A DNA stretch of 64,000 nt from Selaginella moellendorffii (GCF_000143415.4 NW_003314322.1:807430-871429); one strand, 5' to 3'; counted from the stretch's first letter, positions 45,510-63,728 are shown. Numbers and translations: made by a program. Notes: generated by a model not told the origin, from the sequence alone.

Positions 45510-46114
45510 CTACCGTGCTTGAAATGGTGCTTGTGACAAATCCACTGCTTTCTCCAGCAACTGCGCAAATTTTCAGTCAGCTTCTAGCAAGAAAAAGAAA
45601 AGCATGGGAGAAACCTTGCTCAGAGATTTGAGCTCGCGGAAAATCGGTTGCAACGCTTTGGTATTGACTGTGGGAGGCTTCACATCGATCGGCCACACCT
45701 GGAACAAAAAAAAAAGAAAAAAAAAAAACGTGATTGTAGCTCTCGGAGAATGAAATGGCTCGAAATCTTACTAGAAACATCACACCTGGATTCCAAGAAC
45801 TTTAACAGGCTTGACGAGGCCAGGGATGATGCAATCCGGGCCTGCCGCCTCCACCATAGCCTCCTCTGCTAATCCCATGCCAATTGGATCCGGATGCTGG
45901 AGATTCTCGAGTTACAAGACGAATGCGGCCCAATCCCGGGGTTTACCTTCATGATGCTGAGGGCGTAGTCGAAATTCCTGCTTTTGCTGACGATGATCGC
46001 GCTTGGAGGAGAAATTCGAGGCAGCGGAGGCTCACCGGGGCGCGACCGCCATGGCGCGTCTCCGGCGAGCTGCTTCTTCGTCGTCTTCTTGCTTGACGAG
46101 CTCGTCATCGCCAT
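45510..46114 (-). CDS. Small conserved plant protein of unknown function, about 4 exons
   Basis: GDAPWRS..LPRI..YALSIMK / HPDPIGMGLAEEAMVEAAGPDCIIPGLVKPVKVLGIQ / VWPIDV..LQPISRELKSL / ..AVDL. GT-AG introns; resembles an uncharacterised land-plant family from memory. Confidence 0.7.
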
Positions 46115-46285
46115 AGCCAAAGAAGATTCCAGGCTCTCCCCAAGCCCTAAGTTTACGTGCGCATCGCCACCGTCGGCTTGGTAGAGAATATGGACCGTCC
46201 GATTTGAACGGTCAAGTGGAAAACAAAATGGTTTTTTGTCAATTATTTTCGCAAATTTACAAGACAAACTCTTCCTTCCGCAGCG

Positions 46286-47887
46286 TCATCTCGAAGCGAA
46301 CGATCTGCAAGAACAGTAAGAGCAGTGAAAAAGCTTGTTCTTGCAAGAGATGGAGATGGAGAGAAGAAACTATGAAACGAAAGAGTTCCGGAACTTACGA
46401 TCCAAACGAAACCGAAAACGTCGGCCTCAATGTCCTTGGCGCATCGCCCTGGAGCTTCTCCGAGATTTGCTGTAGTTCCTGAGAACCCAAACAGTTTATA
46501 GAACTTGAAAAACAGCGAGAAACCACCTTCAATCCGCTGCTTGTCGACGCCAAAGACGAGGCCGAGGACGAAGATTTCGACGAGGAAGCCAAGGATGACG
46601 ACGATGGGCTTCCGGACTTTAGCAGCGGAGGTTTCGGGGCCTGGAATGCACACAAGGTTGTAGAGGAAAATGACAAGTATCGAAAAGCTGTACCTGTTGT
46701 AAGAGATCTAGCTTGCGCTTGGATTCCAGCAAGCCGGGGCGTCCGTGCTCCAAGTCTTGCACGTACTGACACAGCAACAGAATTCCTCTGTTGGCAAAAT
46801 CTTGCTTGGATTGAACTTCGCCAATCTTCGATTCCTAAACCCACAAGAACACATTCACTCCCGCATATCCTCGGCAAAATCAAGCACATACCAAGCCTTC
46901 GACCATTTGCTGGACAACCTGGACGTCGCCACCGCATTTTACGACGTCGCTTCTCATGTCAAGAACCTGGAAACTATCGAAGATAAGCGAAATGACGGAA
47001 AGGTATCAGTGTCAGTACCTGATTCTTTATAACACCTTGGACTTCGGCACTATCTTCTAAGGCTTTTGATACATCTTCTATTCGCATCGACAGGTGCCTT
47101 CGAGTTGCCTGAGTTTCACATATAGCGGGATGAGGAAAAAGCATACAGAAGACATTACCGCAAGCACTGCCGAGACTTGATCGAACTGCTTCGAAACCTC
47201 CGAAACAGCATTTGCCATATGACGCTTCGTAACATAGAGAAAGTCGGTTAGACGCCATCCCTGCAGCTTCCAAAGCTTAGAATTCGCAACACTCGCATTT
47301 AAACTTACCCGCCACCGAAAGTATCCATATCCCGCAGCGCCAACAACAACCGCGGGCATTGCGAGGGAGGAGATGTTTGCTCCTGTCAAGAACTCGAATT
47401 AGGACGACTGGCCCGAGAAAAATCAATCCCACATACCACTGCCGCTTCCAGAACTTCCATTTATAAATGTGACATCTTTAGAGGCCGCTAACTGCATGAG
47501 TTCCTGCCTTAGTCTCATGAGCTGCAGGGAGCGAGACGAAGTGAGCTTGAGGAAAAAAAGAAAATTTCAATCGCTAACCTGTCCAGCCAATTCGGTAGTT
47601 TTGTCTGAAACCTTCGCAGACACATCCCCGTCCTCTAGATGCTTGGAGATGACCTAAACGCGAGAAAACTTCTATCAATCTCCTCAAAACTATCTGGAAT
47701 GATCGTCTACCTTGGAGAGGTCTGAGATGAAGTCCGTGAGGCGGCCATTATTCACAAGGAACGTTCCCGTCAGTCCTGCAAGAATCACCGCGTGAGAAGG
47801 CGGCGCCGAGCTCGATTGAATCGCGCGCTTACCGGCACCAACGAGAATCAGCACCTTGACGGTCGAGACGCCGGCCTGGAGCGCCAT
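46286..47887 (-). CDS. DUF1664 family protein, multi-exon; 3' end uncertain (46286 or 46395)
   Basis: MALQAGVSTVKVLILVGA / GLTGTFLVNNGRLTDFISDL / AVVVGAAGYGYFRWR / GWRLTDFLYVTKRHMANAV..SKQFDQVS / ATRRHLSMRI. Confidence 0.85.
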
Positions 47888-48006
47888 CGCGAGCTGGAAT
47901 CAAAGCAGAGACCCAGGCATTACGCCCAAAATCTGGCACAAACCCTAGTAGCAGAGTTCCAAGCCCTAGAAAATGTTTTAACAGTACCCTTAGAACATTA
48001 GCCTTT

Positions 48007-48070
48007 AGTCAAACAAAAGCTAAATTCATTCTTCTTCTCTGGTCAACGAAAGTCAAAGGAAGGTTTGACC
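48007..48070. promoter_or_regulatory. Cluster of four W-boxes (TTGACY) in the divergent DUF1664 / hevein-TM intergenic region
   Basis: agtcaa 48007-12, ggtcaa 48041-46, agtcaa 48051-56, ttgacc 48065-70. Confidence 0.6.
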
Positions 48071-48258
48071 ATCCTTGTTGTGCACGACAAGCGATGGAGT
48101 TCATCCATTACCTCACACACCTACACGCGAAAAGAAAAGAAACTAAAACTTTTAGTGAAGTGACCAACAACCTCCCTCGAGCTCTCTCGCGTGATCAATC
48201 CAGCAGAGAATTTCCCCCCATTCTCCTCTTCCACCATCGCCTCTCTTTCTTCTCCGCC

Positions 48259-48675
48259 ATGGAATCGCTCATCGCAATCATCCCGGCATTGCTTATCCTT
48301 TTGCAGCGAAGCAGCGCTCAGATCCCTTGCGCGCCTCCATCCACGTCAATTTGCCCCGGGAGCTCCTGCTGTGGAAAGAATGGCTACTGCGGGATTGGAG
48401 AGAGCTACTGCGGCATTGGCAATTGCCTCTCACAGTGTCCGCTCGCGTACTATCCCCCGCCGGAGCTCCCCGCGGGAGGCTACTACTACTACTATCCTCC
48501 GCCAGAGTTTCCAGTGGAGGAGACGATTGAGCCGGTCGACCGCGGCCACCATAGCATAGCGTGGTGGCTCGGGATAATTGCCGCGGTGGCTGTGGTAGTA
48601 GTAGGGATCCTCGCGGTTTGCTGGCTGGTAACTCGCTCTGTCTCCAGGCATCGCAAGTGTGAGTGTGATTCGTGA
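48259..48675 (+). CDS. Signal peptide + hevein-like chitin-binding domain (CBM18) + Pro/Tyr stalk + transmembrane helix + short cytosolic tail
   Basis: MESLIAIIPALLILLQRSSA|QIPC..CPGSSCCGKNGYCGIGESYCGIGNCLSQC (8-Cys hevein spacing), YYPPPE twice, TM IAWWLGIIAAVAVVVVGILAVCWLV, basic TRSVSRHRK. A possible donor gtgagt at about 48659 could alter the tail. Confidence 0.85.
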   Translation: MESLIAIIPALLILLQRSSAQIPCAPPSTSICPGSSCCGKNGYCGIGESYCGIGNCLSQCPLAYYPPPELPAGGYYYYYPPPEFPVEETIEPVDRGHHSIAWWLGIIAAVAVVVVGILAVCWLVTRSVSRHRKCECDS

Positions 48676-48855
48676 TCTTTCCCTCAACTTTCTTCGCATG
48701 ATCTCTTCCCCGATGAGAGTGATGCCTGTAAGTAATTTGGCTCTCCAAGGAGATAAGTTGCGACATTCTTCACGACATTTCGGGGTCGTGTTCTTATCTT
48801 GTCATGGATTCAAAGCAAAGTTTTCTTTTTCTTTCTCTCTCGCTTGCGTGCCGAT

Positions 48856-50131
48856 CTAGAGCTTTGATGTTAGAGTTTTACGAGCCAGGCAAGCCTGGAT
48901 AGATCCGTGAGGTTCACTCGTTGGGAGGTAGACGTCGTGATCAAACTGCAGATGGATGGAAGCGAGAAATTTCAGAGGAGAAATGGGGACAAAAAGTACC
49001 TTCACACCAACAGTGGGCATGTTGACAGGCAAAAAATGGAGATTTGGCATGTTTAATTCGATCGAGCTGACTTCCGGGACACTGAAAGCTTAAAGAGTGA
49101 CAGAAAGAAACAAGCATGAATTATATACTCGAACCTTCGCAACACCTCTTGTGCCATAAGATAGAGCGTGTTCTGCACGGAGGGGCTGTAGACTCCACTC
49201 TTGGATGGCCCAAAGAATGTTTCAAAGAGAGTTCTTGTGACTTTGTCATAGGTTCCAGTGTAGCACGATGGCTTTCTCGCATATCTGTCAACAAAAACAA
49301 GTTTTTTTATGCGTAGAAATGTTTCTTTTCACCTCCATTTTGCGGTGACCGTCGAAGCAAGCAAGCGCTCTCTCACTTCAGGAAGAAGCGTGAATTTATC
49401 GCGAATAAACCCCTCAAAGCCGGACTGGAAGATCACCGAAAGTTGGTACTTTTTCTTCGATGGTTATGAGATCCACACACCTTGGTTGTTTTGAGCAAGC
49501 TGAGGTCCGTGAATCCAGAGACCACGTCCACGCTAGATTTGTCTCGAGAGATGGTGATCTCCGCGGTTCTTTTTTGAGATCCAAGCTTGAAACCTGGTGA
49601 GGGAAAACTATAAGAACTCTGAAAGAAGAAAAACTTTTAACCGTGTTGGTGTGGGATTCCATCGATTGAGACGCGTTCCCAGTTGTTTTGGACGAGAGAG
49701 ACGCAAGCTCCAGTCACCTGTGCAGCGTTTTTTTAACGTGAAAAGCCACACTCAAAGAAAGATGTGTGCCTACCTCTTTGTATGTATCGAGGAAGTGAGA
49801 GGCAAGCTTGATCCCAAAAGTTTCTATAGACACCGGCTGGTGACAGAGCTTGGCGAGAGCATACACCTTTTCTCACAGGATATGTTGGGTAAGTGGATCC
49901 AGCCAAAACAAAGAAAGATATATAAAGCTTAACTGTGTTCTTGATGGAATCAGTGGCCACGATGCTGGAATTGTCGCCGGCGGAGTACGCAGGGATGCAA
50001 TCCGAGGAGAGAATGATCGAAATTGTCCACTCCACAAACTCGTGATCTTTGCCATCGCCGCGCCACACGCGAGCAACGCGAACTCTCGCCTTGCCGTGGC
50101 ACTGCTCCTTCACTACGATCTCGTCAGGCAT
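48856..50131 (-). CDS. UOX: Uricase (urate oxidase), peroxisomal, multi-exon
   Basis: [87 protein letters not shown]-terminal PTS1 SKL. Confidence 0.97.
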
Positions 50132-61651: not shown

Positions 61652-61730
61652 TGACTGGACTAGTGAGTCAACGCCGGGGCTGACTAAGGCCGTGAACTGA
61701 CTAAGTTGACTAGAATTGACTGATCTGACT
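61652..61730. promoter_or_regulatory. Dense TGACT / W-box cluster
   Basis: Seven TGACT cores in 80 bp, three of them full TTGACT (61666 minus, 61706, 61716). More W-boxes at about 61963, 62126, 62152 and 62169. Confidence 0.5.
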
Positions 61731-63728
61731 TTTATACGAGTCGAGCTATCTTTAGACTTTACAGCAACGCAGAATTGAATCCCCGCCACCTTTGGACAAC
61801 GAAACAATATTCAGATTCTAAGTTTCTTGTCATTTATTTATATTTACACTAATTCCAAGGCCTGATAATATTGCAGGCATTTTCTTGGTTTGGCAAAGTC
61901 ATCAGAAGTAGCAAAACTAGCTCACGAATTGGTCAGAGCAGCACGAACCAAAGATCGATCAATTTGACTACATTTTCCCAGCCAAAGGACCACCACCATG
62001 AAAATGAAAATTGAAAAGCCAAGATTCTTTTTTGTCTCCTTTTTTATAAATATATATTTTGACAAGACAGACTGATTGCTTGGATTCCTCTCGGAACAAG
62101 AAACTACAACTTTGACGGCACGACCGGTCAACGTGCAGTGGAACCGGATGGTTGACTGGCTTAACACTGGTCAACGCTGCCGGCTGGTCCAGGGCCGACT
62201 CCTTCTGGCTCCACTGTTACAAATCTGCCACGTTTCTGTACTTCGTAAAGTCCCATTCTCTCTTTTGCAGCTGGATGCCAATATTTGGTTTTTCATTAGA
62301 CTAAAGAAATGGTTCTGGATTTTCACTCCAATCTTCCTGCACATGAAGATTCAGCGAGTTTTTGGAGATGTTTCCAATGTTGGATAACGTACAACATATA
62401 TGTATACATAGTTGTTATATACTTTTGTGCGGATCCAACAGAAGCTGGCCCATTGAGAACTTTGAGAGTCTATAAATTCGCGGGACCACGATCACTCACG
62501 TTCACGTTCCCATTTATAATGTCCCTTTGTGATCAGTGATAAGTGAGCAGCGACGATCGAGCGAGGAAGGACCCGATTCAAGTACTATGACAGGAACACC
62601 CAAACCCGAAGGTGATCACTGACACACTGCGCAATTGAATTCGAGCTTCGTACCGCACAGCGAAAACGATTGAATATAGTGGAGTCTCAGATGTGTTTGT
62701 GGCTGGAGAGGCAAACCAAAGTTTCTTGCTCCTTTTTTACAGCTGATTTGATTTGTGTGGACTCCTGGAGAAACATGCCAGGTGAAAGTGTTTGTTTAGG
62801 ACACGGGGTTCGACACCACACGTGAGATCGCAGGACAACTAATACCTGAGGAGCGATCAAGAGGTTTATAGCTAACTTGAGTCACCTTTCCTTCAATTCA
62901 ATGCTCGTGGAAACTCTCCCATCTCGTCTATAAGATCTGGGGACCAACGTTTTTCTTTATTCTCAAACTTAATCTGTGCTTTGGCGCATGAAATCTAGCA
63001 AAGCATTTGATTAAGTTGTGAGCCGGGAGACGAGGCGTCGCTCTAGGCGAGAATCAAGCGATCATTAACTTTGTAACCAGCTAGGATGAAACAAACCAGA
63101 GCGATCATCTCATGCATTGGGAACAGCGTGTATGCTGCTGGCTGGCCACAGCCTTGCGCATAAAAACTAGAGCAACTTTTCTTTTGGTTTCTCTCAGTCG
63201 ATCCGAAATGTTAGTGCTTTTGTAAGAGCTTGAGTCAACATGACAAGCTTTTGTATAGCCAAAAACACGAACTTCCACACCACACGTGCACTAAATAGCG
63301 AGATACCTGGACAGAATCCTCAGAAGTTTGTGTCCTAGTTTACAGGTGAATGGGTACCAAAATCAAGATGCCCAAAACCAAAACGTATAATGCATGGAAC
63401 TTGATTTCAAGTGACCGACCACAACCAATCCATCCATCAGCATCATCAGCCCGCACGCTCGCAAGGTTTACAAAACCATTCCATAGCTTTCGGCCAAATG
63501 GCTAAAATCTTGTTAAGTTCCGCGGGCGGGGGTAATTCAAACCGCAGTGTTGTCTGTGAAGTGGACAAGGTATGGATAGATTGGATGAACACCGTGCATA
63601 TATAAAAGATCTTTTATATAGCAATGCAAAAACCCTCTTGATTGCATCTTGGATCCAAATTACGAGACAAGCGTTGTTTTTATGATCCATGATCCACGTT
63701 CACGTGCACTGATCATCACTGCCAAGCG

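What the first reader, a model, noticed from the sequence alone, without database searches (positions are those of the whole stretch)
48007..48675. Kinase-less, membrane-anchored hevein-domain protein behind a four-W-box promoter: candidate non-LysM chitin/glycan receptor-like protein
Seen: a 138-aa ORF with signal peptide, an 8-Cys hevein-type domain, a YYPPPE-repeat stalk, a 25-aa TM helix and a short basic/Cys tail, with four perfect W-boxes within 65 bp about 190-250 nt upstream. Known: plant hevein (CBM18) domains usually occur in soluble lectins, antimicrobial peptides, class I/IV chitinases and PR-4, whereas membrane chitin perception uses LysM proteins (CERK1/CEBiP); W-boxes bind WRKY defence factors. 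The site is altered: CCGKNGYCG replaces the canonical CCS-x-aromatic-G-aromatic-CG, so the Ser and one aromatic residue are lost. Inference: a defence-induced plasma-membrane glycan sensor or decoy with an unusual architecture, possibly with a changed ligand.
Basis: partly seen in the sequence, partly recalled or inferred. Interest (0 to 1): 0.8.

Follow-up and report, generated by a model that had tools for sequence, protein, structure and literature searches.

The report
Unannotated membrane-anchored hevein-like protein, spikemoss
A small spikemoss (Selaginella moellendorffii) gene that no searched annotation lists encodes a cell-surface protein carrying one divergent chitin-lectin (hevein) module on a membrane anchor without a kinase, a layout that published plant lectin surveys do not list; its role in sensing chitin is untested.

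Summary
Window 48259-48675 (+) is an intact 138-aa ORF. It has a signal peptide, an 8-Cys hevein-like domain, a Pro/Tyr-rich stalk, one TM helix and a 14-aa basic, Cys-containing tail. Four W-boxes lie at 48007-48070.

The window is Selaginella moellendorffii. The gene is missing from every protein set searched, and no gene is called at the allelic place. Three spliced RNA assemblies cover it unspliced. The uricase gene converges 180 bp downstream, so "kinase-less" is right.

The ORF is intact in both haplotypes. In a third haplotype it is almost invariant while its flanks vary.

One paralogue, SELMODRAFT_440210, has the same layout and the same CCGxNGYCG motif. An algal or plant transcriptome protein carries five hevein domains, a TM helix and an RLK kinase. 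The predicted fold matches hevein structures, but both paralogues score below Pfam's cutoff.

Not supported or untested:
- Defence induction. Transcripts occur in many data sets, the W-boxes sit in a promoter shared with a divergent DUF1664 gene, and the paralogue has none.
- Chitin binding and any receptor role.
- The transcript strand and 5' end.

Verdict: a real gene and a new variant of a known kind, of moderate interest.

The parts
48007..48070 (.). Cluster of four W-box cores (TTGACY): 48007-12 (-), 48041-46 (-), 48051-56 (-) and 48065-70 (+). The last two form an inverted pair, AGTCAA-N8-TTGACC.
   Evidence: One search lists the sites. One search gives P about 4e-4 for such a cluster in this window. 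The cluster is identical in the allelic haplotype, and no difference is listed in the third haplotype X2 between 47914 and 48155.
47832..47965 (-). First exon of the divergent neighbour, a DUF1664 gene (ATG at 47887, 324 aa when spliced). Its mRNA 5' end is at about 47965.
   Evidence: The RNA contig ends at 47965 followed by adapter letters, and 11 CT..AC introns of 48-94 bp are seen. Spliced translation. Pfam DUF1664 on the allelic gene.
48041..48258 (+). Putative 5' UTR. RNA contigs begin at 48041, 48082 and 48170. It contains an in-frame upstream ATG at 48094, which would give a 193-aa product.
   Evidence: In haplotype X2 a net 8-nt deletion (at 48191-48198) puts that ATG out of frame, so the extension is not conserved.
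48259..48318 (+). Signal peptide, aa 1-20.
   Evidence: Hydrophobic core with an S-S-A|Q motif; helix 4-16 in the model.
48319..48441 (+). Hevein-like (CBM18-like) 8-Cys domain, aa 21-61.
   Evidence: Pfam Chitin_bind_1 at E 2e-5, 25.1 bits (27.2 for the ectodomain alone) against a cutoff of 27.8. PDB phmmer hits ADL and WGA at E 3e-7. AF2 pLDDT is about 90, and the top 30 Foldseek PDB hits are all hevein-type.
48442..48552 (+). Pro/Tyr-rich stalk, aa 62-98 (YYPPPE twice, YYYYY, then an acidic stretch and HH).
   Evidence: pLDDT is about 63, i.e. predicted disordered. The YPPP, PPP and HH positions align with the paralogue.
48553..48630 (+). Transmembrane helix, aa 99-124.
   Evidence: KD maximum 3.1; AF2 helix 100-136 at pLDDT about 90. 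The only allelic amino-acid changes, I107V and V115A, are conservative and lie here.
48631..48675 (+). Cytosolic tail of 14 aa (basic, with C-x-C-D) plus the stop codon.
   Evidence: The R-S..R..C-x-C-D pattern is conserved in the paralogue. There is no splice at 48659.
48676..48855 (.). 180-bp interval between the two convergent stop codons. It must hold both 3' UTRs, and RNA contigs run through it.
   Evidence: contigs run continuously from 48041/48082/48170 to 48945.
48856..48945 (-). Last coding exon of urate oxidase (ends ...SKL, stop at 48856). This is the downstream boundary of the gene.
   Evidence: ORF ending TLTSKL; CT..AC intron 48946-48999; Pfam Uricase on the allelic gene, whose CDS end maps to 48856.

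Best explanation
This is a real, transcribed and so far unannotated gene of Selaginella moellendorffii. It encodes a 138-aa single-pass type-I membrane protein. After signal-peptide cleavage, one divergent hevein (CBM18-like) module sits outside the cell on a roughly 37-residue disordered Pro/Tyr-rich stalk. A single TM helix follows, then a 14-residue basic, Cys-containing tail that may be S-acylated. There is no kinase or other signalling domain.

Shown here: ORF integrity in three haplotypes, constraint on the CDS, RNA coverage without splicing, the hevein fold, and a paralogue with the same layout.

Inferred: it acts at the cell surface as a small glycan-binding subunit, probably for GlcNAc-type ligands. 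The altered site keeps two stacking tyrosines but lacks the Ser and the first aromatic residue. To signal it would have to work through a partner, as receptor-like proteins do. It is the kinase-less counterpart of hevein-ectodomain receptor kinases. The W-box cluster in the short promoter shared with the DUF1664 gene suggests WRKY input, but this is not shown.

My confidence is about 0.85 for the gene and its architecture and about 0.3 for the glycan co-receptor role. The figure of 0.55 given for this explanation is for the whole statement.
For: - ORF and segments.
- Organism: searches give exact matches of neighbouring proteins to S. moellendorffii; the allelic scaffold is GL377584.1.
- Transcription: X1, X5 and X6 are shown to be RNA by roughly 50-bp intron skips in the neighbouring genes. 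Their contigs cover 48041/48082/48170-48945 with 0 mismatches and no joint inside the ORF. The ORF-only stretch 48175-48640 is held at a share of 0.8 or more by 13 transcriptome-sized runs from 5 studies.
- Constraint: in haplotype X2 there are 14 SNP or indel events in 398 bp of flanks against at most 2 in the 417-bp CDS (Fisher P 4e-5 to 1.4e-3). The allele carries 1 synonymous change and 2 conservative TM changes, and the ORF stays intact.
- Fold and family.
- Paralogue P0014 (SELMODRAFT_440210): BLASTP 1e-17 over the full length, with the same order of parts, the same CCGxNGYCG, GNCLSQCP and tail C-x-C-D.
- Kinase counterpart P0042: 5 hevein domains, a Pro-rich stretch, a TM helix and an RLK/Pelle kinase.
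- No room for further exons: the uricase stop is 180 bp downstream on the other strand.
Against: - Strand not shown. All RNA evidence comes from unstranded contigs, which merge this region with the spliced uricase mRNA. Coverage could in part be a long uricase 3' UTR.
- Uncertain N-terminus. Two contigs begin upstream of an in-frame ATG at 48094. If that ATG were used, it would bury the signal peptide behind 55 residues.
- The Pfam score is below the gathering cutoff in both paralogues.
- The Ser and first aromatic residue of the canonical chitin site are missing, so chitin binding may be weak or lost.
- The AF2 alignment consisted of hevein domains, which biases the model toward that fold.
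- There is no induction, localisation or binding data.
- The W-boxes are not conserved at the paralogue, and they are as well placed for the DUF1664 gene as for this one.
Confidence: 0.55

Rival explanations
1. Wall-to-membrane tether or wall-integrity component. The Tyr/Pro-rich stalk is hydroxylated or glycosylated and cross-linked through Tyr into the cell wall, as in extensins and PERKs. The hevein-like knot is then a structural cap or binds an endogenous wall or arabinogalactan glycan, not microbial chitin.
For: - The stalk has YYPPPE twice and a YYYYY run and is predicted disordered.
- The paralogue's stalk is longer and more extensin-like, with SPSPP and APPPP.
- P0042 has SPPPP-type linkers, and its kinase is closest to the PERK, ALE2/extensin and CRK groups.
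- The canonical chitin-site residues are lost in both paralogues.
- Transcripts occur in many data sets.
Against: This protein has no canonical Ser-Pro(3-5) extensin motif. The stalk is only about 37 residues long. No experiment bears on the idea. The conserved Tyr42 and Tyr49 would be unexplained.
Confidence: 0.15
2. Membrane-tethered precursor of a hevein-like antimicrobial peptide. Like the three-part precursors of hevein-like peptides (signal peptide, mature knot, C-terminal propeptide), the ectodomain is cleaved in the stalk and released. The TM segment serves only for sorting.
For: - The best structural and sequence matches include hevein-type antifungal peptides: WAMP-1a 2lb7, EAFP2 1p9z, Ac-AMP2 and SmAMP.
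- The single knot followed by a C-terminal extension has the same order as those precursors (my knowledge of that family).
- A W-box promoter is typical of PR-type genes.
Against: The TM helix and the tail motif (R-S..R..C-x-C-D) are conserved between paralogues that share only 33% identity, which argues for a function of the anchored form. There is no dibasic or other obvious processing site in the stalk. Known propeptides are not TM helices.
Confidence: 0.12
3. Not a gene. The ORF is a chance open frame lying antisense in a long 3' UTR of the uricase mRNA, and its hevein-like pattern is a relic.
For: The RNA contigs are unstranded and continuous with the spliced uricase mRNA. No annotation pipeline called the gene, and no exact product is on record.
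Against: - The full-length paralogue has the same architecture.
- The CDS is far more conserved than the flanks that would belong to the same UTR.
- The ORF is intact in three haplotypes.
- The contigs stop 76-205 bp short of the neighbour's 5' end, as expected of a promoter gap.
- A 3' UTR of 690-815 nt would be unusual between genes this tightly packed.
- The antisense 157-aa ORF has no family match.
Confidence: 0.06

Closest known systems
SELMODRAFT_440210 / 448760 (UniProt D8R987 / D8T9Z7), 'Chitin-binding type-1 domain-containing protein', S. moellendorffii
   Same: Same order of parts: signal peptide, one hevein-like knot with CCGxNGYCG and GNCLSQCP, a Pro-rich stalk with YPPP, PPP and HH, a TM helix, and a basic tail ending C-x-C-D. 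It is intronless. BLASTP gives 1e-17.
   Different: It has 197 aa, a longer and more extensin-like stalk, and only 33% identity. It lies on another scaffold without synteny and has no W-box in its upstream 630 bp. It is annotated but uncharacterised, and no paper mentions it.
Hevein-ectodomain receptor-like kinases (for example P0042 from a EukProt transcriptome). Hevein plus protein kinase architectures are reported for ferns, Chlorophyta and Marchantiaceae in PMC6362431.
   Same: Extracellular hevein domain(s), a Pro-rich linker and a single TM helix; the hevein domains are 47% identical.
   Different: Those proteins have several hevein domains with the canonical Ser and aromatic residues, plus a cytoplasmic RLK/Pelle kinase. 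This protein has one altered domain and a 14-aa tail.
LysM receptor-like proteins for chitin (CEBiP, LYM2). This comparison is from my own knowledge.
   Same: Kinase-less, membrane-attached proteins that expose a small GlcNAc-binding module and need a kinase partner (CERK1). This is the functional analogy.
   Different: The fold is unrelated (LysM, not hevein) and the anchor is GPI, not a TM helix. There is no homology, so this is an analogy only.
Soluble hevein-domain proteins: hevein and PR-4, class I/IV chitinases, WGA, UDA and ADL lectins, and hevein-like antimicrobial peptides
   Same: The 8-Cys knot and fold: TM-score normalised to the target is 0.68-0.74, rmsd 1.7-2.2 A. The Gly and non-aromatic variant of the site also occurs naturally in the fourth domain of the Arundo donax lectin (the CCGASGYCG alignment).
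   Different: All of these are secreted or vacuolar and soluble. Surveys of angiosperms list only hevein alone, tandem hevein, hevein/barwin and hevein/GH19 (PMC5485960). None has a TM anchor.

Membership tests
Hevein / CBM18 (Pfam PF00187 Chitin_bind_1) | Eight Cys in the hevein spacing (C-x8-C-x4-CC-x5-C-x6-C-x3-5-C-x3-C) | tested here: met
   The spacing here is C24-x7-C32-x4-C37C38-x5-C44-x6-C51-x4-C56-x3-C60, and it aligns column for column with 31 hevein domains. Only the first loop is one residue shorter.
Hevein / CBM18 (Pfam PF00187 Chitin_bind_1) | Score at or above Pfam's gathering cutoff (27.8 bits) | tested here: not met
   25.1 bits for the whole protein and 27.2 for the ectodomain alone (E 2e-5 and 5e-6). 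The paralogue scores 21.8. The match is significant but below the cutoff, which would explain why Pfam-based surveys miss both.
Hevein / CBM18 (Pfam PF00187 Chitin_bind_1) | Hevein fold (short antiparallel sheet plus helical turn, disulfide knot) | tested here: met
   In the AF2 model pLDDT is about 90 over residues 31-60, with strands 37-39, 43-45 and 56-58 and helix 48-51. Foldseek PDB ranks 1-30 are all hevein-type, with probabilities of 0.95-1.0 for the best, but E is no better than 0.019 because the domain is tiny. Caveat: the alignment used was made of hevein domains.
Hevein / CBM18 (Pfam PF00187 Chitin_bind_1) | Sugar-site residues Ser19, Trp21, Trp23, Tyr30 (hevein numbering, from my knowledge of hevein/WGA studies) | tested here: not met
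   The equivalents are Gly39, Asn41, Tyr43 and Tyr50 in precursor numbering, as aligned. Two of the four are kept. The same pattern is found in the paralogue.
Hevein / CBM18 (Pfam PF00187 Chitin_bind_1) | Binds chitin or GlcNAc oligomers | not testable with these tools
   This needs a recombinant ectodomain and ITC, a glycan array or a chitin pull-down.
Receptor-like proteins (kinase-less cell-surface receptors) | Signal peptide, ligand-type ectodomain, membrane anchor, and no kinase | tested here: met
   Searches give the segments. The stop is at 48675, there is no splice at 48659, and the convergent uricase stop is 180 bp away.
Receptor-like proteins (kinase-less cell-surface receptors) | Ligand-dependent association with a signalling kinase | not testable with these tools
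   This needs co-immunoprecipitation or genetics.
Lectin receptor kinases with a hevein ectodomain | Cytoplasmic protein kinase domain | tested here: not met
   The tail is 14 aa and no kinase hit appears in Pfam. There is no downstream plus-strand exon before the uricase gene.
Hevein-like antimicrobial peptide precursors | Signal peptide, a single knot, and a C-terminal propeptide that is removed | tested here: inconclusive
   The order of parts fits. However, the C-terminal part is a conserved TM helix with a tail, and processing cannot be tested here.
Extensin / PERK-type Pro-rich ectodomain | Repeated Ser-Pro(3-5) motifs | tested here: not met
   This protein has only YPPP twice. The paralogue has SPSPP and APPPP.
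WRKY-regulated (W-box) promoter | Clustered TTGACC/T cores close to the transcription start | tested here: met
   Four cores lie within 64 bp, P about 4e-4. They are invariant in three haplotypes and lie within 0-160 bp of the RNA contig 5' ends.
WRKY-regulated (W-box) promoter | WRKY binding and elicitor- or pathogen-induced transcription | not testable with these tools
   Only unstranded contigs without treatment labels were available.

The most novel reading that the evidence does not exclude
Lycophytes have a second way of perceiving chitin or GlcNAc-glycans that does not use LysM. A WRKY-controlled, TM-anchored hevein-type receptor-like protein (this gene and SELMODRAFT_440210) would present ligand to a partner kinase. 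It would be the kinase-less relative of the hevein receptor kinases of ferns, liverworts and algae, a system later lost in seed plants.
Probability: 0.12. Interest if true: 0.8.

Novelty: new variant of a known kind. Interest (0 to 1): 0.45.

Why it matters
Plant hevein domains are textbook soluble defence modules, found in lectins, PR-4, chitinases and antimicrobial peptides. Membrane perception of chitin is attributed to LysM proteins.

A conserved, expressed, membrane-anchored hevein protein without a kinase is a different case. It sits next to hevein receptor kinases in other non-seed lineages. This suggests that early land plants also used the hevein knot as a cell-surface module.

It gives a concrete, small and easily expressed candidate for testing non-LysM glycan perception or wall sensing in a lycophyte. 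It also shows that small intronless genes with sub-threshold domains are still missing from the S. moellendorffii annotation and from a published genome-wide hevein survey.

Tried and rejected
- Word-index protein search with the ORF: no hit. With the profile of the two paralogues, only P0014 itself came back.
- ESM Atlas by features: nothing above 0.78. Atlas by shape: only soluble chitinase, hevein and barwin clusters, and no hevein+TM cluster.
- Exhaustive phmmer: 55 hits, all through hevein domains. The top hit, P0001, is a low-complexity repeat artefact matching the TM region.
- The search with P0042 was swamped by kinase hits and showed no further hevein-RLK, so the range of that family remains open.
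- Exact look-ups of the 138-aa and 193-aa products: not on record.
- tblastn of the protein on the window: no second copy.
- W-boxes upstream of the paralogue: none.
- The bacterial-type promoter and terminator scan is irrelevant for a plant gene.
- Smo403798 and Smo425957 from PMC10378081 were considered as possible models of this gene and rejected. They have the canonical S/F/Y site residues, three exons and other scaffolds.
- The haplotype-versus-haplotype comparison alone does not show constraint (3 of 417 bp against 12 of 784 bp, P 0.18). The third haplotype does.
- No poly(A)-signal-like hexamer was found on either strand.

Full report
**What is there.** The plus strand carries an ATG at 48259 and a stop at 48673-48675, giving 138 codons.

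The product reads in this order:
- A hydrophobic signal peptide (aa 1-20, S-S-A|Q).
- A 41-residue knot with Cys at 24, 32, 37, 38, 44, 51, 56 and 60.
- A 37-residue Pro/Tyr-rich stretch (YYPPPE twice, YYYYY, then acidic residues and HH).
- A 26-residue hydrophobic helix (Kyte-Doolittle maximum 3.1).
- The tail TRSVSRHRKCECDS.

The positive charges after the helix, and the cleavable signal peptide, predict a type-I topology with the knot outside the cell. Otherwise the description is accurate.

**Organism and annotation status.** Two intronless neighbours, a DYW-type PPR protein and a PP2C, match Selaginella moellendorffii proteins exactly. They place the window on a 1.28-Mb scaffold, with the allelic haplotype on GL377584.1.
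- The 138-aa sequence is not in the 15-billion-protein collection.
- Nothing closer than 33% identity over the full length appeared in an exhaustive phmmer scan of 1.84 billion cluster representatives.
- At the allelic place no gene is called between the uricase and DUF1664 genes. The ORF there is L002 6550-6966 on the minus strand.
- A published genome-wide survey of S. moellendorffii hevein-like genes lists ten genes. It includes neither this gene nor its paralogue (PMC10378081).

**Gene limits and transcripts.** Three run sets (X1, X5, X6) are RNA, because their contigs skip 48-94-bp CT..AC introns in both neighbouring genes.
- Each has one contig that covers 48041, 48082 or 48170 through 48945 with no mismatch and no joint. 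The GTGAGT at 48659 is therefore not used, and the TM helix and tail are retained.
- The same contigs continue into the spliced uricase mRNA on the other strand.
- The uricase stop (…SKL) is at 48856, only 180 bp from this gene's stop. The two genes converge and their 3' ends must overlap, which explains the merged unstranded contigs.
- This geometry leaves no room for further plus-strand exons, so the protein is kinase-less.
- On the other side, the DUF1664 mRNA (minus strand, 324 aa when spliced) ends at about 47965, where a contig runs into adapter sequence. The untranscribed gap between the divergent genes is therefore only about 75-200 bp.
- The ORF-only stretch 48175-48640 is held at a share of 0.8 or more by 13 transcriptome-sized runs from 5 studies. 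Expression is therefore at least basal and widespread.

What the data cannot show is the strand, the level or the exact 5' end.

One complication remains. An in-frame ATG at 48094 lies inside two of the three contigs and would add 55 residues in front of the signal peptide. In the third haplotype a net 8-nt deletion between the two ATGs breaks that frame. The extension is therefore not conserved, and 48259 is the likely start.

**Evidence that the ORF is under selection.**
- The allelic haplotype differs at three CDS positions: one synonymous, plus I107V and V115A in the TM helix. The frame stays intact.
- A more divergent DNA haplotype (run X2) shows 14 SNP or indel events in the 398 bp flanking the CDS, all within the transcribed region. 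At most two unlisted SNPs fall in the 417-bp CDS. Fisher P is 4e-5 to 1.4e-3, depending on whether 0 to 2 SNPs are assumed.
- A chance ORF in a 3' UTR would not be spared in this way.

**The domain.**
- Pfam Chitin_bind_1 matches residues 30-60 with E 2e-5. The score, 25.1 bits (27.2 for the ectodomain alone), is under the 27.8-bit cutoff.
- phmmer against PDB sequences finds Arundo donax lectin, WGA, WAMP-1a, pokeweed lectins and hevein, with a best E of 3e-7.
- In an alignment with 31 hevein domains all eight Cys fall in register.
- An AlphaFold2 model built on that alignment gives pLDDT of about 90 for the knot and for the TM helix, and about 63 for the stalk.
- The 30 best Foldseek PDB matches are all hevein-type modules, with target-normalised TM-score up to 0.74 and rmsd 1.7-2.2 A. 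E-values are weak (0.019 or worse) because the domain is so small.
- At the sugar site, Gly replaces the canonical Ser and Asn replaces the first aromatic residue, while the two tyrosines that correspond to hevein Trp23 and Tyr30 remain (residue roles are from my knowledge of hevein and WGA work).
- This is not decay. The paralogue is only 33% identical overall but has the same CCGxNGYCG. A similar variant occurs in the fourth domain of the Arundo lectin.

**Relatives.**
- Only one hit shares the whole layout: SELMODRAFT_440210 and its allele 448760. It has 197 aa, is intronless and lies on another scaffold without synteny.
- Conservation extends beyond the knot to YPPP and PPP in the stalk, an HH before the helix, and the tail pattern R-S..R..C-x-C-D.
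- One further hit, P0042 from a EukProt transcriptome, has five canonical hevein domains, Pro-rich linkers, a TM helix and an RLK/Pelle kinase. Its kinase is closest to the CRK, PERK and ALE2/extensin groups.
- Angiosperm surveys list only soluble architectures (PMC5485960).
- I found no paper on a TM-anchored, kinase-less plant hevein protein.

**The promoter.**
- The four TTGACY cores at 48007-48070 are a real cluster: the window has 48 sites in 64 kb, and P is about 4e-4 for four within 64 bp.
- They are identical in the second haplotype. No difference is listed in the third haplotype between 47914 and 48155.
- They lie 189-252 nt before the ATG. Relative to the RNA contig starts they span -34 to +30 (contig start 48041) or -100 to -163 (contig start 48170).
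- They are also 42-105 bp from the 5' end of the divergent DUF1664 gene, so they cannot be assigned to one gene.
- The paralogue has no W-box within 630 bp upstream.
- WRKY control is therefore plausible but unproven. 'Defence-induced' is not supported by anything I could test.

**How it most likely works.**
- Shown: an expressed, constrained gene for a membrane-anchored hevein-fold module with no signalling domain.
- Inferred: the knot is displayed some nanometres above the plasma membrane on a flexible, probably hydroxylated stalk. It binds a GlcNAc-type or other glycan through the two retained tyrosines, with changed affinity or specificity.
- Inferred: any signal must pass through a partner, by analogy with CEBiP and CERK1, and the juxtamembrane and tail cysteines are candidates for S-acylation.
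- Rivals: a wall-membrane tether using the Tyr/Pro stalk, a tethered precursor of a hevein-like peptide, or, least likely, no gene at all.

**Verdict.** This is a new variant of a known kind. The domain family is classical. The TM-anchored kinase-less architecture, the conserved altered site and the missing annotation are new. At present the family has only two known loci in one species, and its function is open.

Noticed in passing
window 48676-48945: This gene and urate oxidase converge with stop codons 180 bp apart. RNA contigs run straight from one into the other, so their 3' UTRs must overlap. They form a possible natural antisense pair.
   Followed up: partly
window 48094-48258: An upstream in-frame ATG would give a 193-aa product with the signal peptide buried. 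It lies inside two RNA contigs, but an 8-nt net deletion in a third haplotype puts it out of frame. In that haplotype it would become an upstream ORF overlapping the main start.
   Followed up: partly
window 61666-61721 and 61964-62174: There are two further local groups of W-box cores: three within 56 bp, and four within 211 bp. I did not examine the genes beside them.
   Followed up: no
P0042 (EukProt Trinity transcript, 807 aa): A receptor kinase with five hevein domains, Pro-rich linkers, a TM helix and an RLK/Pelle kinase. No second example appeared among 120 listed hits, which were all found through the kinase.
   Followed up: partly
window 46000-47965 (-): A DUF1664 gene with 11 introns of 48-94 bp, 324 aa here against 325 aa in the allelic model. 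One RNA data set has a 3-nt GAC insertion at 46566, which would account for the extra residue.
   Followed up: partly
L001 4001-4594 (GL377574.1): The paralogue SELMODRAFT_440210 scores only 21.8 bits on Pfam Chitin_bind_1 and has no precomputed Pfam hit. It is absent from the published list of ten S. moellendorffii hevein-like genes.
   Followed up: yes
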